A stretch of 59,268 nucleotides of DNA, the filler included, from Bipalium vagum (taxonomy: Eukaryota), in NCBI GenBank assembly GCA_037834085.1. It is 3 parts of 3 records of this genome, joined end to end, with 100 filler letters (N's around TTAATTAATTAA, not from the genome) between each part and the next. Parts side by side here need not be neighbours in the genome. Positions count along the whole stretch, not along the records: positions 22,724 to 40,120 come from JBBMKC010068029.1; 2 more parts are not named here. One strand, given 5' to 3'. A program made the position numbers and the translations under genes. Positions 26,670 through 40,120 of this stretch are shown piece by piece (the first letter of the stretch is position 1; the number at the start of each line of letters is the position of its first letter). Below the pieces are notes generated by a model, which made no database searches, was not told the DNA's origin, and saw only the letters and a program-made list of their open reading frames with translations.

Positions 26670-27213
26670 AATGTTCAAAGCAAATGATTACAGAAAGGTC
26701 TCATGCAAAATAAGCACTTTTATCGCAGGAGGTAACATGCGTCAACCCATACTTCTTGAAATTACCGAGTGGGTGCTAGCATGCTGGAATGATTTCGAAT
26801 ATCATTCTGAAGGGATTCTTATAATGTGGAATTTCAAATAAATAAGACGGCACTGGGGATTTTTATTTTAACAAAGAAGTATCGGAAGAAAGATTTTCAG
26901 AAGATGATGATGGTGGAGTAGACTATTATGATGGAGAGTATGGTTTTAGAGTACTTCTTTTTAACTGTTCTGAAGAATCGAAGATTTCTCACTGATTTGT
27001 AAATGTCTGTACTGTCATAAAATATGTTGTTTGTTTGTAAAAATAATTAAAATCTCACGCACTTAATGCATAATAATACGCACTTATGTAGCATCATTAT
27101 TTTTCCAAAATTTGACTGTGTATTATATGCGAATATTTAATTTTCCTCAATTTTCAGGCCTAACTGTAGCCGCGTATCATACACAGGTGCGTATTATACG
27201 TGAGATTTTACGG
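26670..27213 (+). mobile_element. pogo-like transposon 3' part with TIR
   Basis: AGGNMRQP..LEITEWVLACWND..I.KGF..CGISN..DG is a pogo/DDE_1 C-terminus, followed by an acidic tail. It ends gcgtattatacgtgagattttacgg-ta (reverse complement CCGTAAAAT..CGTATA) with subterminal gcgtattata-like repeats. Confidence 0.7.
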
Positions 27214-27448
27214 TATATTAGTAATAACTCAAAATATCTGCAACCACAACGTACTGTATTAGTGCCTGTATATTAAACATTTTTTTATTGTTACTGTGAG
27301 GATTTTTAGTTAGTTTTGATTTTAAAAGTTTTATTATTTAAACAAAACTACTAATATTTAAATAATAGCTTTGTTTAAATAGTTTTATTATAGATAAATA
27401 CATATTTTTGAAAATGGATGTTGAAAATTTTTCTAATGATATCAATGT

Positions 27449-27717
27449 AACTAACATGGCAACCACACCAGGACACCAACTAGCGATCGAGGTCTCGAAA
27501 GTCGAATAAGCAAAAGGAAAGGAAATTGAAATTAGAGACTCGGGGCGGTAAAGGGTATGGATGGGATCTTTAAAGGAGGGGGATTTGAGATAATTTGAAA
27601 ATATTCAGGGGATATAGCTCAGCGGTCAGAGCAGCCCATGCGCATGTGAAGGGTCCCGGGTTTGAATCCCGGTATCTCTGATTAATTTTCAACTAACATG
27701 GCGACCACACCAGGACA
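27449..27717 (+). mobile_element. Miniature LTR retroelement (TRIM) unit with a tRNA-derived LTR, tandem/permuted: LTR end-PBS-internal-PPT-LTR-PBS
   Basis: 27-bp direct repeat aactaacatggc(a/g)accacaccaggaca at 27449-27475 and 27691-27717. Each copy is ...AACA plus an 18-nt TGG-initial PBS. PPT aaaggaggggga at 27572-27583. The TG..CA segment 27586-27698 contains the tRNA-like sequence. Confidence 0.7.
27608..27680 (+). pseudogene. tRNA-Ala(CGC)-derived sequence (pseudo-tRNA / Pol III promoter module)
   Basis: GGGGATA acceptor stem pairs with TATCTCT; D stem GCTC/GAGC; T stem CCGGG/CCCGG. A box TAGCTCAGCGG is intact and B box GGTTTGAATCC has one C>T change. The loop TGCGCAT resembles Ala TTCGCAT, but the anticodon stem does not pair. 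Confidence 0.8.
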
Positions 27718-28424
27718 GAAGCAAAATTTGATATTTTTGATTTTTAAATTATTGTTTTAAAATTTATTTAGAAAACATTTTAAAAAGGAAAAGTATTAAG
27801 AAACCATTAAAATTTTAGACTGATAAATTTCTTTCAAAATTTTATTTCCCAAATCAATAAGTACAAAATTTCATTTTTTTCTTTTACTAATTTTTACGTG
27901 CTGTAAAAATATTTTATTATATTATTTTTTTAAAATTAAATCAACATTTAATATATTTTCACAAAAGATCAAGGATGTAATTAGCACAATGTGAAAAGAT
28001 TCAAGTTTCCTCATAATAATTAATAAATTTATCTTAAATTTGCCGTCTTAAAGGAAAAATGTCTATTTATTTTCCTGATTCATTTGAAAATATAATATAA
28101 TTAAATTTTTTTTTCCAAGCAAAATTATCCCATATAAGTTAAAAAGAATTGCAATTTAGATATTTTGATCCTGTAGAAGTACAATAGCTTAATGGACTAT
28201 AAAAATACAGTAAAAAAACTTTCCCCTTTTAACTGCCAGATCCAACATTCATCAAATTTTAATTAGAAATATGTTTTATTTATAAATAAAATAAAATCAA
28301 GCTTGATTACTGTCATCTTATTTGTAATCAACCTTAGATAGCAACATAAAAATTACTAGCAAATATTTAATGATTTATTTTAATTAATTCGATATAATTT
28401 TCGATTTTGATTCTAAATAAATGT

Positions 28425-31400
28425 ATGATGAATGTTGTGGAAGCTAATGTTAACAGGAAGTTGTCGACCAGCTCCAACAGCCTTATTCATGTGGAGAAGC
28501 CTCTCTTTAACCTTGACTGCAACTCCACCACTTCAGATAGCTTTCACAATTTGAATTACGAAAAGAAATCGAATTTTGTTCCTGAAGTATCATTGACCTC
28601 GTCCAGTACTCAATCCTTTCAAACAAATGTCACCAATGGCTCCTTATTTCCAAGTATTAAGAGTTTGGATCAAAGTCAAAATTATACTAATTTTTCCAAT
28701 CTCATGAACGCCAAAAGTGAAAGTTATGAACACGATCAAAATCTCAACGAAGAGCTCAGTATTCCTATGACACCAGTTAAAGAGGAATCTGTGAATATAA
28801 TTAAACCTTTGTCTTTAAATTACACATATGTTACTGAAACCAATCCACCGCAAATAAACGACTGTCCTGTTATTTTTCGTCGAATGTCTTTCGAAAACTC
28901 CTCTCCTCAAAAGAGGCCAAAATCACCGAGCAGAAAAAGTCTTTTCTTAACGCAATTTCTTTGCGACCAAAAAAAGCTAATTCAGTCCGAGTTTATAACT
29001 GATTTCATATTAAATCCGTCCTACAATGAGCACTTTAATAGTATTTTGAAACCCATTTCATGCAAGTCCGTTCAAACATTACCAGTACTTATTTTACCAA
29101 ACTCATCAGAAGACAAAAGAATCGAGACAGAGGTTTGTCGTTGTAATAATAAATAATAAAGTCAACTAATTAAATTAAATTTTGTCTGTTAAATAATATC
29201 TTGTTAACAAATAATTTTAAAAAAGAAGTCTGGTCGATTTTGTTTAAATAATAATATTTTTTGTCAAAATTTATGTTAATATTTCGACAAAATTATTATT
29301 ATAAACATTGCCATTATATTATTTTCTTATTATAATAATTACTCTCATTTTTTCCATTCCGTGGAAAATCCCAGCAAATATTTTTTTTATAAAAATTATA
29401 TATTCGTTATATTTTGTTTTATAGCATGCATATGTAGTATACTAGCAAGTAAAAGACTGATAAACAATATATTAAATAAAACTACAGAAAATTATCTGAT
29501 TCCATTGGTACTTCTTTCTAAACTCAATCTTTAGATACTGTAAGTTAATAGAGGCCAATTTATTGGAATTTGTTTTAATGTGTTACTAGGTGATGAAACC
29601 ATCATCTGGAATAACGATTTATAAATCAAGTTAATATTAGGTTGAACGTAAAGTTCTTGCCAAATTCTAAACAAAAATAAAAACCAAAAAATTTTTAACA
29701 AAGACATTTATTTAATCCAAAATATAGTTTCCATTATTTTCAACAACTTGTCTCCATATATCTGGTAAACCATCGATACCTCTAGCAAAAAAATCTTCGG
29801 ATTTGGACTCGAAGAAAGTCACAAGAGCCGATTTAACATCACTCGAATCAACGAATGATCTCTGGTCCAGATAATTTTGCAAGGTACGAAAAAAATAGAA
29901 CTCCGAAGGAGCAATGTCAGGCAAATATGAAGAATTTGATTAAGAATTTCCCAACCCAGTTCATGTACCTTCCGATGGGTTTTGATTGCAACGTGGCCTT
30001 GCATTGTCATGGTGTAGAATAACACCCTTTCGATTGGCTAAATTCGGACATTTATTTCGTATTTCCTATGATAATCGTGCCAATTGTTCACACTATAGAT
30101 TGGCTGTAATTGTTTCACCAGGAGGTAACAACAATTCGAAATGTACAATTCCCTTGCGATTCCACCAAATCGAAATCACGGTCTTTTTTCCATGGATATT
30201 CGGTTTTGATGTGGTAGGAACTGGTTCACCTGGTAAGACATAGGCTCTTTTACGCGTGACATTACTGTAACGAATCCATTTTTCGTGTCCGGTTATCAAT
30301 CTGTCAAAAAATGGATCATTTTCATATCGTAAAAGGAGAGACGAACATGCAAAAACACGATCCATTTTGTTTTTTTCTGTGAGATCATGTGGTACTCATT
30401 TAGACCATTTTTGAATAAATCCTAGTTTATGAATATTGATTATAATAGCTGTTTGTGAAACCTGGAGTCTCTTCATTAATTCCCTTGTAGTAGAAAATGG
30501 GTCTGCTTTTAATTCAGACTTCAAGATGACGTCATTAACAACAGAAGGGCTGTCTGAACGTGGTTTATCTTCCAAGCTGAAATTTTCATTTTTGGAATTT
30601 TTGAAACCGGAACCGAACTATTTTATCTGTTACAGTTTCCTTTCCGAATACCTCTTGCAAATTTCTGGTTGCCTCAGTCTCACTGTTCTTCTTTTGAAAT
30701 TCGTACAAGATACAGTGTCTTATATGTTTTTTGTCAAAATTCATTTTAGCGCTAAGAAAATAGAAAGTAAATTCAGATAAGCAAATTATTCCTTTATTAA
30801 TATAATTTATTACTTTAATATAAGTTTATTGTATTGCATCAAGAAATTTTTTTTGAGTTATAACATAATATTAAAAATTGGCAAGAACTTTACGTTCAAT
30901 CTAATACAATAAACGAAAGACGCCCAAAATATGCACATGGCGAAGGCATTGTCAACAAACACAATAATCTAGCCGTACATCATTAGACACTCGTAACAAA
31001 TTGACCAATATTTTGTGAAATCGTTTGACTCGTCCTCCGTACTCACAGAACATTGCTGCTATTTTTTATCATTCGTTTCGTTGACTAGAGAATTTCTTGA
31101 ACTAGGAAGCCATTAAAACCCAGATTGACTCATTTTTCCTGTGAAAGGTGACAGCTGTCATTCATATTATTAGTTTAGATATATTCCAATTTGTTAATTA
31201 GTTCTGTTAACAAGTTGATGAACTTATTTTTTCATCAATTATTAAGTTTCATTTAATAAGAATAAATATAACTTGTAAAATGAGCTGATTTATTTAATCA
31301 CTATAAAGGTTAAAACAAGACAAGAATAAATACGGGGTGTGCCAGCAAAATCCGGAAAAAAAACAACTGTAAAAAAACTTAGATATATTAAATAATATCA

Positions 31401-34112
31401 TAATTATTTAAGCAAAAGTTATATTTTTGGATTAAAAATATGTTCCGTGCTTCTATTGCTCGGTAACAAGTTTCACCGAACAACTCTTTTAGTTTTCGTA
31501 GCCTCAGACAGCATTTGTCGTATTTTTAGAAAGTATGAAGTATATCTTAGGTCTTCTTCAGCTATCCGACGCATTGTTGTTATACTTATCTTCAAAGTTG
31601 CTGCCAAACCTCGAAGCGATGTCTTCGGATCTTCCATTATTAACTGCTTAGCTCTTTGAAGAACTTCCGAGGTCCTTATTTTCCTTTCTTTATAATATAT
31701 TTTTCTTTTAGGTGTACTAGAGGTTCCTGCAGATATTTCCAATCTCCGATATATTTGTGCGACATCGTACACTGTCGATCGTAAGTATCCAAAGAAATTA
31801 ATTATTTCAGCCGGCGTTCTTCCAGCGCCAAGACTTTCGAGAATCACGATTCTTCGATAATATTTCAAGCCTGATTTTTGTAAACTTGCCCTTTTGAAAA
31901 TTGTGCGCAATTTACAGACAAATATATCATGTTAAAACAAATGTTAACTCTTATAATTAAAATCAAGCATAAATATAAATTTCAATTACGCTTTGTCAGG
32001 ATTTTGCTGGCACACTCTGTATTATGTCCAGTCATTTCAGTTTTATAAAAAGAAAAGTTTACGAAAAGGTATTTTTATCGACAATTTTAGAAATCAATTT
32101 CATCAAATAACTCTTCTTTATAGTTTATTTAAATTTAATAAACTTCCCGAATGAAAATAACCAGGTATGCAACCCAATAAAGATCTCTACATTGATGGGA
32201 ACAGTTCATAGGCATGGGTTGGTTTAATATCTGGTCTATATGGAAGGAGAGGTAAGAACTTCGATGGAAACTTTATGATTTTCTGGTTGTTGATTCCATG
32301 AAGAATGTATGACTTCATTTCTCTTTGACAAGTTGGGGTTTTTCTTCAATTTTATCTTTTAATCTTTTTAATTACTGCAAATAAAAGTTAAAATTTATTA
32401 TCTCACAATGGTTCAGGAACTCGAGATGAATAATACCTCTGGTTGACCATCTATTATATACAAGTATGCTTTAAAATTATATTACAGTTTTCGTAAATAT
32501 AGGTGATTTTCCAGATGAAAGTCACACTTAATTTCACACTTAGATTATTGTTTATCTTCTATTTCTCATCATTAGAATTTACAGTCCATAATGTTTTGTT
32601 ATAATGTCCTGAAATAAACATTTTGAATGTTCATCACAGCAGATGGTTTTCACACTGAGTGAGTTTGAGGTTCTTATAATATAGACCAGATTTTATTTTA
32701 CGTCAGTTTTGAACTATCACATTTAAGACCGTTTTCTGGTTGAATATTTGTAAAGGTATAATCATCCATTTCATTTCTTGTTATCCGTAATGGATTTTTG
32801 ACTTTTATTAACAGCTTTGGTTGCTTATAACAATTTTGAAACGATTTTTCATAAACCCTTCAGTAACAGAAAATTTAGTAATTTTGCTCATTGAATGACT
32901 TATTTCCCATATTTATTTATAAGCATATCCAGTATATTTTTTTCATTAATTTTATTTGTATTTATTATTATTACCTAATATTATTATATTGATGTTATAA
33001 CTTGTTATATACTAAATATATTTTTAACGATGAAGTGCTCACATAACATACAATGCCTAAACCCGAAGCAAAACCTTTGATCTATTTTTGTGATCCTTAA
33101 GGGCAATCTATATAATTACAATGATCATAAAGAGCAATCAGGTTACTTTACAATATTTAATTATTTATTAATTTTAATTTGCCAAAAATTGAAATAAAAT
33201 TTTAATTAACCAATCCCAATTCAATTAAAATTGTAATATCTTAAAATAAAATTGAAAACTATATTATTTTAGATCGTTTTTAATGTCAGACAGCAAATTT
33301 CAAAGAATCATGTAAACAGTAAGAAGCTTTTCATTGAAGTTAATAATAAAGAAACTCAAGCACCAACAAGAATGGAGCCAAGAGCTAGAACAATTTCAGA
33401 AATTAATTCATATTCCAGGACAAAAGAAAGTACTGGGTTATCTGAAAGAAGATCTAACAAAGGTGACACTAAAAGCTTACAAAGAGGATTTTGGGGCGAT
33501 GTTTATAATGATTATAAAAAAATTTCAGTGTTTAGCAAGAGGAGAGAGGACTTGAAATTATCCACATCACAGAAACTATTAAGTAATCGAATAAATAAAA
33601 CTAATTCTAAAAAGAATTTTGACTTGATATTCAATACTGATGAGGAAATAAAGCCATATGTAAAAATACCAGCGAGCAAAACCTTAACACATGTACCAAG
33701 TGGAACCGTAGACCCTCCGAAAATATGTTTGAATCAAAAAACTTCAGACGAAGAAGATATGATTTCTGAAATTTTAAATTTCCATAAATTTTTTGAAGTT
33801 GAACCTTTTGACGATATTGTTAAGTCGTACTTAACGGTAAGCGATAGACGTGTTCGAGCTATTTGTAGCAGGATGAAATGCAGAATTCGGTTATATGGAC
33901 CCCAGTCTCGAATACAGCCGGAACCAAAATCCCAGCCTCAGTCAGTTCCACGTGAAAAGTCAGCATATTATATTATTATTAGCACTAACGCTAAAGAGGA
34001 TCTGGATAAATGTTTAAAATGTATTCAGGAAACATTTCCAAAGGCATTTTTAAATGAAAAGTCCAATTTTCAGCATACCTTTGAAATATGTGGAGATGAA
34101 ATACCTTTGTAA
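28425..34112 (+). CDS. Uncharacterised ~515-aa protein: S/N/T-rich low-complexity N-terminus and C-terminal degenerate KH-like domain; 2 exons
   Basis: Exon 1 28425-29132 (GAG|gtttgt) joins in frame to exon 2 33273-34112 (ttttag|ATC), linking the two longest non-transposon ORFs. AATAAA at ~34125. The C-terminal DIVKSYLTVSDRRVRAICSRMKCRIRLYG...YYIIISTNAKEDLDKCLKCIQETF has type-I KH periodicity. Confidence 0.75.
29637..30904 (-). mobile_element. Full-length, inactivated mariner (DD34D) in intron 1 of the KH-like gene
   Basis: Near-perfect ~27-bp TIRs ttaggttgaacgtaaagttcttgccaa with TA on both sides; 1268 bp. Transposase runs from ATG ~30744 to 29712, with *VPHDL, LITGHEKWIRY, HDNAR and YLPDIAPSEF broken by frameshifts. 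Confidence 0.95.
30910..31130 (+). mobile_element. Older mariner fragment
   Basis: RPPYSQNIAA..YH.FR*LENFL at ~31032-31099 (decayed HPPYSPDLAPSDYHLFRSL). Confidence 0.45.
31333..32019 (-). mobile_element. Internally deleted Tc1/mariner-superfamily element (maT-like) keeping only the HTH region
   Basis: TIRs cggggtgtgccagcaaaatccggaaaaa and reverse complement cagagtgtgccagcaaaatcctgacaaa, with TA flanks; 687 bp. ORF 31473-31910 has AGRTPAEIINFFGYLRSTVYDV...DPKTSLRGLAATLKISITTMRRIAEEDL and no catalytic domain. Confidence 0.88.
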
Positions 34113-35049
34113 ATTTAGTTTAAAATAAACTTTAATTTAACTTGTCAAAATATTTTATAAAATTTAAATAAAAGTAAATATTTCTGGAAAATATTAAATA
34201 AAATTAATTTGCTTCTAAGTATCAACTTCTGAAAAACTATCAGAAATTTCTCATACTTTCATTCATAAAAATATAAATTTAATATTAAAATAATTACCAT
34301 GATTTTTTTCTATTAAATATTAGTTAATTTGAAGACTAAATAAATATAACAGTCAAAATTAGTATTTCATAAGGATCCGCCATTATTTTCTAGAATACAT
34401 CAAAATATTTATCTCAATTTGGTCAGATTCATGAACAAGAAATAAATCCATTCTAACTAATTTGAGAAAAGATATCAAGGAATTGATTTTGTCTTATAAA
34501 AGAAAAATGTTATTTGAATTAAATGTTTTATAAAAATATTAATTATGATACAATAATATATATATATATATAAACATAAAAACAAAGAAAATCCAGATTA
34601 TAAAGAATTTTTTATATTTATGACAATAAACCGAAATACGAAAAACATAAAAATAAAATATGGACAATAGCTGACGAATAATTTTGGGAAATTTTATTCT
34701 TTAGCAATAATAATAATAAAATAATAGAAATACAAAATGAAGAAAATAACATTTTTGAAGAATTCAACAAATTAAAAGTATACACTTAAAAAATAGAGGA
34801 TTCATTATAAAATGGATTTATTAGAATCAATTCAAGACAAATCAAATATGGAAATGGGAATTTAAAGTAACAGTTAGTTTTAAACCCGATAAATTTTAAA
34901 ATGTTAATCAGCAGAATTTTGAATGGGATCTAATGATGTATTATATACAGTTAATGAATACGTTGGTAAATTTTATTCTAGAAAAAAATTTACTGTAGAA
35001 AAAATAGTAAAATTAAATTTAGAATTAATTACAGAAGACTAAAAATAAG

Positions 35050-37790
35050 GTTTTCTGAACGTTTTCTGAAATGTTGCGTTTAAGGCAAACTCGATTTCTG
35101 GTAATAGATTTTCCCAATCATTGTTTCTTCTCTCAGCCATAGTAGTATTCATGTAGTCACGATTGTTCGGAATTGCCATTCTATTATCCAGTTGGTGATA
35201 TGATGATACGGACTGGATAAACAGATTTTTGAGTTACTCTGTTTGATTAGTATCTTAAAAACCCTAGATTCAAAGACGTTCCCATAGTCTGCATGAATTT
35301 CCTTTGGTGCACCATATTTATAGATCCATTTTTTCATTATTAATCTTCGAATTGTTTCCTCATTCTGTTTCATTATTAACGTTAATGAAATGTACCTGTT
35401 ATACTGATCTATAATAGTTATTATATATCGTTTCCTTCGAAAATTTTCTTTTAACGAACCGCATATGTTTATACCATATGTATATATCTTTTCAAATGGC
35501 TCATCTGCTGATAATTTCATTGTATCTGCTTTCGTTTTTGTAGTGACTACTTTATGCTTCTGACAGATTTCGCATTGTTTGATAACTTCTGTTGCTTTCT
35601 CTATCAGGTCTCTGTGTATCTCTTCCACTAAGATTCGGCTCTTGATTTTTGAAATATATATCTTTCCTTCGACCGTTTTAACCAGACCATCTTCCAAGCA
35701 GCAATAAGATGTAATTCTCTTTTCAATATCTTCTTTAATCCTATTGATTTTATTTTCATCCTTCTGCCATTTACATTGTGTCTCTTCGTTTACTGTATTT
35801 ATTGTTCTGGTCTTTCTTTTTTCTGTCTTTGGCTCTTCATGAACCATCATACACTGAAAGCACGTACAACACATTTTTCTCGACAACATGTCTGCTTTCG
35901 TGTGCTCAATTCCTTTTCTGTATTTAGGCTCTTTATCAAGACTATTGAGATAATTCATCCACGTCTGAAATTATATTGTTATTGGTTTTTTTGTCTTAAA
36001 CATGAATTCTATTGCTTTGTGATCTGTTCTCACTAGAAATTTTTTCCCATACAACTAATGCTAAAAGTGGTTACAGAAGTAATAGATTTCTAATAGCTTT
36101 TTTCTTGTGATGCAGTGTCCTTTTTCATGACTGTTCATTGCATGTGATCCGTACGCGATCACTCTCTTTTCCATTATAGTCTGTCTGTGATCATACTATT
36201 CCAATCGCTTCAAAACTGGCATCATTGTCTAATATAAACGTTCTTTTAATGTATGGAAAGGCTAAAACTGGGGTCTTTGTTGGCGACTTTTTCAAATCTT
36301 GGAAGGCTATATTGCATGCTTCGGTCCATATTAATTTCCCATTTTCTCCCCACACAATTGTTCTAACACTCTTGATTTTTTTGCATATCCATTAATAAAC
36401 TTTCGATAATAATTACAAATGCCCAGAAAGATTCTTACATTTTTTACGCATTTTGGCCTCTCGAAGGTTTTGATTGCCTCAGTTTTTGCTGGGTCTGTCT
36501 TGATTTCTTGTTTGTCAATAATATTTCCAAGAAATTTGACTTCTGTTCTTAGTAGATTGCATTTCTCTGTATTTACTCGCAGTCCTGCTTCTTTTATCCT
36601 CTTAAGTACTTCATTTAATGCGGCGAAATGATGTTCTATATCTTCTGTGTATCACGATATCATCTAAATAAACCATCTTATTTTTAAATTTCATAAAAAC
36701 GTCGTCATCATCTCTTGAAGAGTTCCTGAAGCAGCGGCAATACCAAAAGACATTCTTGTGAAACAAAGTTTTCCTTCTTTTGTTGAAAAAGCTGTTTTTT
36801 CCTGTGAATCCGTCGTCAATTAAACCTGGTAATATGAATTACCCAAGTCAATTGTGCTAAAATATATCGCTCCTTCCAATCTAGCCAGTAGATCCTTTAT
36901 GTTTGGAATCGAAAAAACGTAACTTTCAATCACCTGTTTCCGCTTTCTAAAGTCCAGACATCATCTGACATCTTTTCTTACCTTTTTCCATACGGAAATT
37001 AGTGGCGGGTTTCATGGCGAATTGCATCTTCTTATTATTCTGTCCTAAAATATTATCTTTATTGCTTCTTTGATTCTTTTTTCTATCTGCACGGTTTCGT
37101 GTTAATTGGTTCACCAGTGGTTTTTATATGGTGCTTCATCATTTTTGTACATCCAATATCCCACTGATCTTTATTTTTTCTATCACTTCCAAGAGTTTCT
37201 TCTCTTCGGCGATGACTAATAATATCTACTTTGATCTCAGCATGCACTCTTCATCTTTAACAACTCTTCTAAACTTGGCCTCAATGTTGCATACATATGA
37301 GACCTCATTTCAATCAAAAACTTCATTAATTTAAATCCGAACTTTGTACAAAATTTTGTTCTTCCAAACAGCTCTCGTGAAACCTGCTATAAAATTTTGA
37401 ACAACATTAACTCAGCTCTATCTCCAATATAAACATCAACTGTTATTCTTCAAACAACATTCATAGCACTATTATTCGAAGTCTTCATGGTCTTCATGCA
37501 TCTTTTTATTTCTACATTGCCTAATTTTAGAAATTTATTCCGACTGTTTATATTTATGCTAGCTCCGGTATTCAGTAAAAAATTCAACTTTTTTTTATAA
37601 AACTCTTTTCTGTCATCTTAATTGGTAATTTTTGACTTACATCAACTTACAACATTATTTTCTTCTTTACTACCATCAATACTTTTTATTGCTTTTGAAT
37701 TGTCTTTGGCTTTGATTTGGTTGTTCGCCAGTCATCGGCTTGTTTCATTGACATTGTTATTTTTCGCCATTCATCAGGAAGAGAGAGGTA
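35050..37790 (-). mobile_element. Degenerate Ty3/Gypsy LTR retrotransposon pol (protease tail-RT-RNase H-integrase)
   Basis: RT: CLDFRK, TIDLGNSYYQV, KTAFSTKEG..FTRMSFGIAAA, VYLDDIV (~36673-36653). RNase H: LDNDASFEAIG. Integrase ORF 35149-35958 has C..C, IID, IHADYG.VFES and SSPYHH. Domain order is RT-RH-IN. Confidence 0.9.
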
Positions 37791-38109
37791 CGCTTAAACA
37801 GTAAAAAATTAACTCTCTTTCGCCATTCTTTGGCATAGGAAACTTATCCAGCATACCAAATAAACAGACAAAATCCAAAAAGAACCACAGCATAAAATAT
37901 CTTATCTGAGTCTAGAAAGTGCAATTCAAAAAGTGCAATTTAAAGTTAGAAATATTAATGAAAATATTAATTAGAATTTGTACTTTCTCATCCAGATTTA
38001 ATTTGAATTTTTACAATTATTTACAATTTACCATTTTTACAACCAAAAAAAAATAATTAAACACCAACAAATTTACCAAAATCACATATATATATTTACA
38101 AATTAATAT

Positions 38110-39060
38110 TTTGTAGGGCCACCTCTAGCTTCAATTAATGTTAGCCAGATGATGACGTATTGATTCGATTAAACGTTGAATATGCTTAGCATCCAATTGT
38201 GTCCAAGTATAAGCCAGAGAAACCTTTAACTCATCTTTTAATTGCAGTCGACGATTACTAATTTTCTTTTCTAATCAAGTCAAAAGATTAGAAATTATTT
38301 GCATGATCTTGACTATTTGTCAGTGTTAATTTAACAAAGAAATTGAGTGAATGTTTGTTAAGAACTGCTTGATATGCATCGAAAAGAAGGTTTTTCTCCA
38401 GGATGGTAACTGCTGATGGGAAATTAATGTATTATGAAAACATATCTAAACAGATCATGGAAAAGTCAGGTCGAGAACCTGTAGCAGTAGCTAAGCGTGG
38501 TTTGACTCACAAGAAGGTATTTATGTATATTTTGTTTGGATATTTGAGGGGTTTTCTATAAAGAATTTCTGAAAGTGAACAAACGTTTACTACAGAAGTA
38601 TATATTCAAAAATTAGATAAAGTCAACTCGGTAATCAAAAAGACTTGGCCTTCACATCTAATTAGAAATGGAATAATCTTCTAACAAGATAACCCTAAGC
38701 CACATACTTCCAATTTAACAAAACGAAGCTTGACAGACTGCGTTGGATAGTTTCGAAACATGTTTCTTATTCTCCAGACAAAGCCCCTTCAGATTATTAC
38801 CTATTTAGATGTTTGAAAAATAGTTTATCTGGCACTAAATTCAAATCGAGTGATGAAACAATTTCACAAGTTAAATCTTTTTTCTATGTTCCAAAGATCA
38901 TGATTTCTTGCGAAAGATATCCTACTTTTCTTCAAGAAATGTAATGGTAAGTTTTGATTTGACTATATCTTGGAAAAATATATTGATAAATTTATTATTT
39001 GATTTGAATAAAATTTATAATTCGTTTGTGTTTGTTTTTTGTAAAATCACGCTTTTAAAC
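38110..39060 (+). mobile_element. Degenerate mariner
   Basis: MVTADGKLMYYEN (~38403), QDNPKPHT (~38685) and YSPDKAPSDYY (~38768) are decayed DD34D motifs. Confidence 0.75.
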
Positions 39061-39389
39061 CTTCAATCGTTAAGTTCTGATTTGCTCCTTAAATATTTAA
39101 GAGACATAACATTTGGTGAACCAGACATGATACTACGTTCGGAGCGTTTAAAAATTCTTAATAAATAAAATTTTTAAAACGGCAACTGAAAATATTGATA
39201 CTAGTTTTCTAATTGTTGAAATCCCGGATTTATAAACTCAAACACATACCCAAAAACTAAAACAAAAAGGTTACCCAAACCGTGAGACCAAAAAAATTGA
39301 ACCGTTCTCAAACACGATTTCACAACATACATTTTAAATAATATTTTAACAAAACAAACAAAATGGCAGATGAGAGTAATGATATTCAA

Positions 39390-40120
39390 ACCTACTTTAT
39401 ACAGGTTATATTAAAATAGACACATACTAGTATCTTTCCTACAACAATCATTGCACTATTGTTTGCGGTCTTTATTGTCTCCATACATTTTTGAATTCCA
39501 GGACTTCCAATTTCTTGAAAAGTCTTCAAGCTCATCACATTTATTCTAGCTTCGGTGTCTAGTAAACATTCCATTTCATGGTCCTGAAAAATAATAGTCA
39601 CACTTGGCCTTCCTTTCATTACGTGATATTTGATACTTGGTTCTTTAAAACTGTTCACCATTAAAATCTCAATTTTGTCTCCATTACTGACATTCTTCTT
39701 CAAAAATCTATTCAGCTTTTCCACTACCACTTTTCACATTACCAATCACTTCCCTCTCATTGCGAACCAAATTCCTACGTCTAATTCAAGACTCCGATCA
39801 ACTCGACCTCGGACGGAGACCTCCCTTTTGGGTGTTCATAATACGAATCTGTTTGCTTTTCCCCATTTTCATACTGTCTTTCTCTGTCTTCTATCGTTGA
39901 AAATGCTTCTACCGTATCTTCTGATAAGCCGTTCACGTTTCTATGGAATGTGTTGCTTCTTCTTCCATACTCTCTTTTTCCTGTTTCTGTCATAATTAAA
40001 TCGTTGCCTGTTGGCTCTTATTCTAGATTCACTGTTGTAACATTCTCTTTCCTGATGTCCGTTTCCGTGACAACGATTGCACTTTACTCTGTTACAATCT
40101 CTTCTTATATGGTCTTCTGA
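39390..40120 (-). mobile_element. Second Gypsy copy: gag CCHC knuckles and aspartic protease, truncated by the gap
   Basis: HIRRDCNRVKCNRCHGNGHQEREC (~40112-40041) and protease LLDTEARINVMS (ORF 39392-39730). Confidence 0.85.

What the first reader, a model, noticed from the sequence alone, without database searches (positions are those of the whole stretch)
27449..27717. Miniature retroelement whose LTR is a tRNA-Ala gene and which appears primed by tRNA-Arg
Seen in sequence: a 242-bp period unit. It reads aactaaca, TGGCAACCACACCAGGAC (27457-27474), ~100 bp internal region, purine tract aaaggaggggga (27572-27583), TG at 27586, tRNA-Ala-like sequence (27608-27680), aactaaCA ending 27698, then TGGCGACCACACCAGGAC (27699-27716). 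Established: LTR elements have TG..CA termini, a PBS of up to 18 nt starting TGG right after the 5' LTR, and a PPT before the 3' LTR. The PBS complement GTCCTGGTGTGGTCG-CCA resembles the 3' end of metazoan tRNA-Arg(TCG). Plant Cassandra TRIMs carry 5S rRNA in their LTRs, and as I recall tRNA-bearing TRIMs have been named Helenus. Inference: this is a non-coding, Pol III-driven TRIM with a 113-bp LTR, mobilised in trans by a Gypsy-type partner. A tRNA scanner would call it only a pseudo-tRNA. It may be an undescribed family in this lineage.
Basis: partly seen in the sequence, partly recalled or inferred. Interest (0 to 1): 0.85.

Follow-up and report, generated by a model that had tools for sequence, protein, structure and literature searches.

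The report
Helenus-type tRNA-bearing miniature LTR retrotransposon
This 269-bp GC-rich island is a rearranged copy of a very abundant, non-coding miniature LTR retrotransposon whose LTR carries a decayed tRNA-Ala gene, a kind of element (Helenus/TRIMp3) first described in 2024, so it is a new family of a known kind and not a new class.

Summary
A 27-nt direct repeat (26/27 identical) lies 242 bp apart. An Rfam tRNA match (42.7 bits) sits at 27608-27680.

Contigs of one public run of the same organism show a large dispersed family: 2,718 contigs were laid on the stretch. 211 of them end exactly at the CA at 27698 and run on into unrelated AT-rich DNA with no A-tail. Other contigs read LTR, then the TGG primer-binding site, then the internal region. 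Most copies start the LTR with TGT directly after the purine tract, which gives an LTR of 27584-27698 (115 bp).

The tRNA-like part keeps boxes A and B and the G3:U70 pair of tRNA-Ala, but its anticodon arm is broken. The primer-binding site matches the human tRNA-Arg string at 14 of 18 positions.

This is the anatomy of Helenus (Kojima 2024). None of 19 short motifs, including the primer-binding-site strings, meaningfully matched the published consensus sequences. Its size and primer type differ from the wasp families.

This copy is not canonical. It has only 8 nt of a left LTR, an extra primer-binding site after the right LTR, and no target-site duplication.

Not tested: the host tRNA-Arg, the Gypsy partner, Pol III transcription, and the host taxon.

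The parts
27449..27456 (+). Last 8 nt of an LTR (the U5-side tail, ending CA). This is all that is left of a left-hand LTR in this copy.
   Evidence: Identical to 27691-27698. The sequence upstream of 27449 is unrelated AT-rich DNA.
27457..27474 (+). Primer-binding site, copy 1 (begins TGGCAACC). The A at 27461 differs from copy 2.
   Evidence: No A>G difference is listed at 27461 among the contigs laid there, so the A form is common in the family.
27475..27571 (+). Non-coding internal region. The two ends are conserved among copies and the middle (about 27492-27527) is variable.
   Evidence: Summed depth is 16k at 27474-27491, falls to 1.2-3.5k at 27492-27527, and rises to 9-12k at 27546-27599. 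The letters between the joints 27717>27513 are diverged versions of 27476-27512. Only chance ORFs of 42 aa or less are present.
27572..27583 (+). Polypurine tract (12 purines).
   Evidence: Read. It lies directly before the family's TGT LTR start (position 27585).
27584..27698 (+). Complete LTR, 115 bp. It ends ACA. It starts TGT in most copies; here it reads TTT, and the first TG is at 27586.
   Evidence: 211 contigs have loose ends directly behind 27698, running into dissimilar AT-rich sequence (agreement 0.45). Loose ends before 27608 and 27615 keep the leader motif that starts TGAGATAA. Position 27585 is G in nearly all copies.
27584..27607 (+). AT-rich leader of the LTR (U3-like), upstream of the tRNA-like part.
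   Evidence: The motif is kept in the loose-end consensus of 58 + 65 contigs.
27608..27680 (+). tRNA-Ala-derived pseudo-tRNA. Box A is at 27615-27625 and box B at 27659-27669. It has a G3:U70 pair and a broken anticodon arm.
   Evidence: Rfam tRNA 42.7 bits. The fold gives acceptor, D and T arms but no proper anticodon stem. ARAGORN finds nothing. This is the most conserved part of the family: summed depth 140-217k at 27618-27689. Most copies have C at 27663, which gives the textbook box B.
27686..27689 (+). T4 run, a Pol III terminator-like signal, 6 nt after the tRNA-like end.
   Evidence: Read. Published Helenus LTRs have a similar T-run between the tRNA-like part and the terminal ACA.
27699..27717 (+). 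Primer-binding site, copy 2 (begins TGGCGACC), plus one more base shared with copy 1. Unrelated flank follows.
   Evidence: A 1,974-nt contig covers 27688-27840 with no difference, so the junction from LTR tail through primer-binding site to flank is real in the reads (record 8).

Best explanation
The stretch belongs to a highly repeated family of non-autonomous miniature LTR retrotransposons of the Helenus / TRIMp3 type.

Anatomy. A canonical copy would be LTR (115 bp), then an internal region (127 bp), then LTR, about 357 bp in all. The LTR consists of a short AT-rich leader, a decayed tRNA-Ala gene that keeps boxes A and B, a T4 run, and a 9-nt tail ending CA. The internal region starts with an 18-nt site complementary to the 3' end (CCA included) of a tRNA-Arg-like tRNA. 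It ends with a 12-nt polypurine tract.

Likely mechanism (inferred). The tRNA-derived module acts as an internal Pol III promoter. The RNA is packaged and copied by the proteins of an autonomous Ty3/Gypsy-type element that uses the same primer tRNA. Minus-strand synthesis starts at the primer-binding site, plus-strand synthesis starts at the purine tract, and integrase inserts the DNA.

This copy. It is not a clean insertion. It is a circularly permuted 1.11 units: 8 nt of LTR tail, primer-binding site, internal region, purine tract, full LTR, then a second primer-binding site. It is most likely a remnant of a tandem LTR-internal-LTR-internal arrangement trimmed by deletions.

Shown here: the anatomy, the multi-copy dispersed state, the shared LTR end, and the order LTR then primer-binding site then internal region in other copies.

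Inferred: Pol III use, the helper element, the primer tRNA identity, and how this copy arose.
For: - Repeat, primer-binding site, purine tract and TG/CA ends are present as described.
- Rfam tRNA hit at 42.7 bits. Acceptor, D and T arms fold, with G3:U70.
- 2,718 contigs of run X1 were laid at 80% likeness or more: 85 at 99% or more, 473 at 95-99%, 1,233 at 90-95%.
- 211 contigs end at 27698 and continue into heterogeneous AT-rich sequence.
- Joints 27717>27513 (5 contigs for that joint, plus similar ones) carry about 38 diverged letters homologous to 27476-27512. This gives the order LTR, primer-binding site, internal region.
- Record 5 has purine tract, LTR and primer-binding site in one contig elsewhere in the genome.
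- The tRNA-like part is the best conserved part of the family.
- G at 27585 in most copies puts TGT right after the purine tract (all the above).
- Only chance ORFs of 42 aa or less overlap the stretch.
- The definition of Helenus, its sizes (311-1263 bp) and its LTR:internal count ratios of 2-11 fit.
- Published Helenus LTRs share the layout: TGT, leader, tRNA-like part, T-run, short tail, ACA.
- The primer-binding site matches the human tRNA-Arg string quoted in PMC11905727 at 14 of 18 positions, including the first 10.
Against: - This copy has one complete LTR only and no 4-bp target-site duplication.
- None of the 8 contig pieces listed (of 2,771) carries two LTRs around one internal region.
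- The host's tRNA-Arg was not seen. The more common form of the site (A at 27461) would need U, not C, at tRNA position 72.
- No autonomous element with this primer-binding site was found. The only Gypsy-type remnant in the piece (35149-40120, minus strand) is cut off at both ends.
- The T4 run lies upstream of the primer-binding site, so Pol III would have to read through it in the 5' LTR.
- The very high depth over the tRNA-like part may include true tRNA-Ala genes or a related SINE.
Confidence: 0.85

Rival explanations
1. Same family, different origin of this copy. It would be a captured by-product of reverse transcription, not a trimmed tandem array. The order primer-binding site, internal region, purine tract, LTR, primer-binding site is what minus-strand DNA plus plus-strand strong-stop DNA look like before the second strand transfer. 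A broken 1-LTR circle would also give a permuted unit. Such DNA could have been joined into a chromosome break without integrase.
For: The right end lies 1 nt after the 18-nt site, where plus-strand strong-stop DNA ends. The left end lies 8 nt before the other site. There is no target-site duplication. The neighbouring DNA is unrelated on both sides. The right junction is confirmed by an independent contig (record 8).
Against: The 19th base (A at 27717) matches the element's own internal sequence, not the base expected from copying tRNA A58. The 8 extra LTR bases on the left are not predicted by the simple model. Another contig with purine tract, LTR and primer-binding site contiguous (record 5), and the tandem arrays reported for LTR-11_DR, make a tandem origin simpler.
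Confidence: 0.12
2. It is a tRNA-Ala-derived SINE (SINE2) present as a partial head-to-tail dimer and mobilised by a LINE. The TGG site and the purine tract would then be chance.
For: The tRNA-derived part with boxes A and B and a T-run is far more abundant than the rest: 140-217k against 1-20k summed depth. 49 contigs start matching only at 27660.
Against: The unit ends sharply at CA in 211 contigs, with heterogeneous AT-rich continuation (agreement 0.45) and no A-tail. A conserved leader lies upstream of the tRNA start, whereas a SINE starts at the tRNA. The 18-nt site starts TGG directly after CA. A purine tract directly precedes TGT.
Confidence: 0.03
3. It is an ordinary tRNA-Ala gene or pseudogene, with a chance 27-nt repeat nearby.
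For: The Rfam tRNA score is above the gathering threshold, and a T-run follows the 3' end.
Against: The anticodon arm is broken and ARAGORN calls nothing. Thousands of related contigs include the non-tRNA parts. The 18-mer pair has zero chance expectation.
Confidence: 0.01

Closest known systems
Helenus (tRNA-bearing TRIM; TRIMp3 group), Kojima 2024, PMC10886601
   Same: It is a short non-coding LTR element. The LTR runs TGT, leader, tRNA-like sequence with boxes A and B, T-run, short tail, ACA. A primer-binding site complementary to a tRNA 3' end follows the LTR and a purine tract precedes it. The tRNA-like part is not a working tRNA and is not the primer: 8 of 15 matches outside CCA. LTRs greatly outnumber internal parts. 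Tandem forms occur. The predicted size of about 357 bp is inside the published range of 311-1263 bp.
   Different: None of 19 short motifs of this LTR, internal region and primer-binding site gave a meaningful match in the published consensus file. The only arthropod Helenus described, from chalcidoid and cynipid wasps, have LTRs of 167-213 bp and internal parts of 200-350 bp (the Synergus families reach about 320 and 620 bp). They use Lys, Leu, Trp or Arg-TCT sites, not this string. The copy here lacks a second LTR and the 4-bp duplication.
Cassandra and Ajax (TRIMs with 5S rRNA-derived LTR modules)
   Same: The idea is the same: a Pol III small-RNA gene module sits inside the LTR of a TRIM, with its own terminator-like T-run.
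   Different: They carry a 5S rRNA-derived module, not a tRNA-derived one. Cassandra occurs in plants and Ajax in nemerteans.
tRNA-derived SINEs (SINE2)
   Same: It has a tRNA-derived module with boxes A and B, is short, and has a high copy number. Kojima proposes that Helenus arose by SINE2 insertion into a TRIM LTR.
   Different: There is no A-rich or LINE-derived tail. The unit has TGT/ACA ends, a leader before the tRNA start, and an adjacent primer-binding site and purine tract.
Ty3/Gypsy elements primed by tRNA-Arg (Drosophila 412 and mdg1, from my own recall; human ERVs with the tRNA-Arg site, PMC11905727)
   Same: The primer-binding site starts TGGCGACC. The first 10 nt are identical to the human tRNA-Arg string.
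   Different: Four positions in the T-stem and acceptor part differ. No coding element with this site was available to compare.

Membership tests
Helenus / TRIMp3 | Short, non-coding element (TRIM size) | tested here: met
   The island is 269 bp and the predicted canonical length is about 357 bp. Only chance ORFs of 42 aa or less are present.
Helenus / TRIMp3 | tRNA-derived sequence with boxes A and B inside the LTR | tested here: met
   Rfam tRNA 42.7 bits at 27608-27680, inside 27584-27698. Box A is at 27615-27625 and box B at 27659-27669. This is the most conserved part across copies.
Helenus / TRIMp3 | LTR with TG..CA ends, shared by many dispersed copies | tested here: met
   211 contigs end at the CA at 27698 and run into unlike sequence. 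Most copies read TGT at 27584-27586.
Helenus / TRIMp3 | Two LTRs flanking one internal region | tested here: inconclusive
   This copy has one LTR plus 8 nt of another. Other contigs show LTR, primer-binding site, internal region, and separately purine tract, LTR. None of the 8 contig pieces listed (of 2,771) spans a whole element, and the Logan contigs break in repeats.
Helenus / TRIMp3 | Primer-binding site complementary to a host tRNA, directly after the 5' LTR | tested here: inconclusive
   An 18-nt site starting TGG lies directly after CA, twice. It matches a human tRNA-Arg string at 14 of 18 positions. The host tRNA set was not available.
Helenus / TRIMp3 | Polypurine tract directly before the 3' LTR | tested here: met
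   12 purines at 27572-27583, adjacent to the LTR start at 27584.
Helenus / TRIMp3 | 4-bp target-site duplication (animal Helenus) | tested here: not met
   In this copy the left flank ends with the four bases ATGT and the right flank starts with GAAG, so there is no duplication. This copy is rearranged, so the test says little about the family. Other copies could not be read.
Helenus / TRIMp3 | Sequence kinship with a published Helenus family | tested here: not met
   19 motifs of 7-16 nt were searched in the supplementary consensus file. Only generic tRNA-box hits in fungal and bivalve families came up. Kinship is not required for the class, since Helenus is thought to have arisen many times.
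SINE2 (tRNA-derived SINE) | Element begins at the tRNA start and ends in an A-rich, simple-repeat or LINE-like tail | tested here: not met
   A conserved leader precedes the tRNA start. The common end is CA, followed by heterogeneous sequence.
Functional tRNA-Ala gene | Complete cloverleaf with an intact anticodon arm | tested here: not met
   ARAGORN finds none. The anticodon stem does not form. The first seven bases vary between subfamilies (loose ends at 27615).
Retrozyme (LTR element with hammerhead ribozymes) | Hammerhead ribozyme in the repeat | tested here: not met
   No ribozyme family appears at E of 1 or less in the Rfam scan of the piece.

The most novel reading that the evidence does not exclude
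The family would be a previously undescribed Helenus lineage in a host group where none has been reported. It would use a tRNA-Arg (TCG-type) primer and have thousands of LTR copies. The permuted copy, flanked by two primer-binding sites, would be a genomic fossil of an unfinished reverse-transcription product or a 1-LTR circle that was joined into the chromosome without integrase.
Probability: 0.15. Interest if true: 0.5.

Novelty: new member of a known kind. Interest (0 to 1): 0.35.

Why it matters
Elements of this kind inflate tRNA gene predictions, because the Rfam tRNA model scores this one above its threshold. They also scatter possible Pol III promoters through a genome. Only one paper (2024) describes them. 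In arthropods they are known only from chalcidoid and cynipid wasps, with much larger units.

A compact, very abundant family of about 357 bp with a different primer type would widen the known range. It would also be a convenient case for asking how a Pol III module with its own terminator can drive an LTR element. The odd copy adds a small data point on how such elements form tandem or permuted structures.

It is not a new class of element.

Tried and rejected
- Exact-pattern scans for the primer-binding-site string in metagenome and viral contigs gave three GC-rich bacterial chance matches (L001-L003). They are of no use.
- No second copy or solo LTR was found in the 17.4-kb piece by sensitive blastn or by pattern search for the purine tract plus LTR start.
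- Host identification failed. Run and organism names are coded. Two ORF searches were blank. Exact look-ups were blank. One ORF has a single homologue of 44% identity in one Logan contig, and its run accession appears in no paper. The Atlas only hints at Arthropoda for the neighbouring integrase.
- The Gypsy-type remnant in the piece cannot be tested as the helper. It lacks its 5' end, which is cut by the piece's edge, and its 3' end, which is truncated near 35050.
- Literature searches for the primer string found nothing relevant, apart from the human tRNA-Arg string.
- Self-priming by the LTR's own tRNA-like 3' end is rejected: 8 of 15 matches outside CCA.
- A hammerhead or retrozyme reading is rejected.
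- Only single positions where most copies differ are reported, as one search printed them.

Full report
**1. What is in the sequence**

Positions 27449-27717 form a GC island (GC 0.465) in AT-rich DNA. The 500 bp to the left have GC 0.26, the 500 bp to the right 0.19, and the whole piece 0.29.

A 27-nt direct repeat lies at 27449-27475 and 27691-27717. It is 26/27 identical with a spacing of 242. Each copy contains an 18-nt string that starts TGG (27457-27474 and 27699-27716). This string occurs nowhere else in the window, and none is expected by chance.

The Rfam tRNA model matches 27608-27680 on the + strand at 42.7 bits, with E 2.7e-6 and a gathering score of 29. ARAGORN calls nothing. The fold gives an acceptor stem with a G3:U70 pair, a D arm and a T arm, but no proper anticodon stem.

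From my own knowledge of eukaryotic tRNA-Ala, the 5' end, the G3:U70 pair and the sequence around the anticodon indicate a tRNA-Ala origin, with three bases lost from the anticodon loop.

Other features, read:
- Box A (27615-27625) and box B (27659-27669) are recognisable.
- A T4 run follows at 27686-27689.
- A 12-nt purine tract lies at 27572-27583.
- The last bases before the second TGG string are CA (27697-27698).

Only chance ORFs of 42 aa or less overlap the stretch.

**2. It is a large dispersed family with LTR-element anatomy**

One public run of the same organism (names coded, kept as Logan contigs) holds 84% of the sampled words of the locus. Laying its contigs on 27330-27840 at 80% likeness or more placed 2,718 contigs. 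Of these, 85 were 99% alike or more, 473 were 95-99% and 1,233 were 90-95%.

Summed word depth is about 22 in the single-copy right flank. It is 140-217 thousand over 27618-27689, 16-20 thousand over the TGG string and the bases after it, 1-5 thousand in the middle of the internal region, and 9-12 thousand over 27546-27599. The tool warns that these figures are not copy numbers. They do show that the family is very abundant, that the tRNA-like part is its best conserved part, and that the two ends of the internal region are better conserved than its middle.

- **Shared LTR end.** 211 contigs stop matching directly behind 27698 and continue into sequence that is AT-rich but heterogeneous (agreement 0.45). 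This marks a sharp common end at CA and rules out an A-tail.
- **Order of parts.** Several contigs run through the LTR and the TGG string to 27717. They then continue with about 38 diverged letters homologous to 27476-27512 before rejoining at 27513. This is the order LTR, primer-binding site, internal region.
- **LTR start.** The unmatched parts before 27608 and 27615 (58 and 65 contigs) keep the leader motif that starts TGAGATAA. Position 27585 is G in nearly all copies (8025 of 8133). The family LTR therefore starts TGT directly after the purine tract.

The LTR is thus 27584-27698 (115 bp). The internal region is 27457-27583 (127 bp). A canonical element would be about 357 bp.

Most copies also have C at 27663, which gives the textbook box B, and C at 27679, which gives a G1-C72 pair. 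One subfamily lacks the first seven tRNA bases but keeps box A onwards. This points to selection on the promoter boxes, not on a working tRNA.

**3. Comparison with what is known**

[quoted passage not shown] Animal Helenus have 4-bp target-site duplications and probable Gypsy helpers. Lengths are 311-1263 bp, LTRs outnumber internal parts 2- to 11-fold, and tandem arrays occur in one fish family.

The published LTR consensus sequences have the same layout as here: TGT, leader, tRNA-like part, T-run, short tail, ACA.

I searched 19 short motifs from this LTR, internal region and primer-binding site in the supplementary consensus file. Only generic tRNA-box matches in fungal and bivalve families came up.

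The only arthropod Helenus described come from chalcidoid and cynipid wasps. Their LTRs are 167-213 bp and their internal parts 200-350 bp, with the Synergus families reaching about 320 and 620 bp. Their primer sites are for Lys, Leu, Trp or Arg-TCT, and their Arg-TCT string is different from this one. No later paper on such elements was found.

I therefore file this as a new family of a known kind.

**4. The primer**

The site with G at its fifth base shares 14 of 18 positions with the string that PMC11905727 assigns to human tRNA-Arg according to GtRNAdb. The shared positions include the first ten, which cover CCA, the discriminator and six acceptor bases. The four differences lie at the last acceptor base and in the T stem, where tRNAs of distant animals commonly differ.

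From my own recall, the Drosophila Gypsy-group elements 412 and mdg1 also use tRNA-Arg.

The host's tRNAs could not be examined. No A>G difference is listed at 27461 among the contigs laid there, so the form with A is common in the family. It would pair with U at tRNA position 72.

The element's own tRNA-like 3' end is not the primer: 8 of 15 matches outside CCA.

**5. How it most likely works**

The anatomy above is shown. The following steps are inferred by analogy with Helenus and Cassandra:
- The tRNA-derived module serves as an internal Pol III promoter.
- The RNA is packaged by a Ty3/Gypsy-type helper.
- The tRNA primes minus-strand synthesis at the primer-binding site.
- The purine tract primes the plus strand.
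- Integrase inserts the product.

One open point is that the T4 run lies before the primer-binding site. Pol III would have to read through it in the 5' LTR and stop at it in the 3' LTR.

**6. This particular copy**

The copy is not LTR-internal-LTR. It reads: 8 nt of LTR tail, primer-binding site, internal region, purine tract, complete LTR, primer-binding site plus one base. That is 1.11 circularly permuted units. The flanks carry no duplication.

A 1,974-nt contig confirms the right junction without a single difference (record 8).

Another contig elsewhere in the genome has purine tract, LTR and primer-binding site contiguous (record 5). Such tandem-type junctions therefore exist in the family. 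A trimmed tandem array is the simplest origin.

The alternative is capture of an unfinished reverse-transcription product or a broken 1-LTR circle. It is attractive because the right end lies one base after the 18-nt site. It does not explain the extra 8 nt on the left, nor the identity of the 19th base.

**7. What could not be done**

- The host taxon is unknown. The Atlas gives only a weak hint of Arthropoda for the neighbouring integrase.
- The Gypsy-type remnant in the piece is truncated at both ends, so it cannot be tested as the helper.
- No RNA run was on record.
- No consensus of the family was built. Only positions printed are cited.

Noticed in passing
window 27330-27447 and 27718-27779: Both flanks of the element are themselves repeated in the genome. 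Summed depth is 900-2300 on the left and 160-300 on the right, against about 22 for single-copy DNA further right. 10-20 variant contigs lie on the left flank. A 19-nt hairpin (27335-27353 / 27363-27381) sits in the left flank. The element may lie inside another AT-rich repeat.
   Followed up: partly
window 27048-27212: A MITE-like unit of about 165 bp has inverted ends: both ends share the motif AAAATCTCACG and an inner arm at 27073-27090 / 27180-27197, 89% complementary.
   Followed up: no
window 29635-30906: A mariner-type transposon remnant of about 1.27 kb is bounded by 57-nt inverted repeats (77% complementary). It carries broken transposase ORFs on the minus strand (Pfam Transposase_1, E 5.7e-15, at 30093-30365).
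   Followed up: partly
window 31329-32023: A 695-bp unit has 32-nt inverted ends (88% complementary) around a 145-aa ORF on the minus strand with no Pfam match. It is probably a small DNA transposon derivative.
   Followed up: no
window 35149-40120 (minus strand): A decayed Ty3/Gypsy-type retrotransposon remnant. It has a gag zinc-knuckle region near 40050-40110, a protease-like ORF at 39392-39730 and an integrase core (rve, 32.4 bits, just under the cut-off of 32.6) at 35149-35958. It is cut by the piece's edge at its 5' end and truncated near 35050 at its 3' end. It therefore has no primer-binding site, purine tract or LTR to compare with the miniature element.
   Followed up: partly
window 33372-34112 (+): A 246-aa ORF without a Pfam family has one homologue of 44% identity (P0001, 289 aa) on a single 1.2-kb Logan contig (L004). 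Its nature is unknown.
   Followed up: partly
window 26690-26990: A GC-richer stretch (0.30-0.43) with short open frames, next to the MITE-like unit. It may be another transposon remnant. It was not tested.
   Followed up: no
window 34415-34502 (-): A weak Rfam match to SNORD111 (26.5 bits against a gathering score of 46, E 0.63) in 26% GC sequence. It is most likely chance.
   Followed up: no
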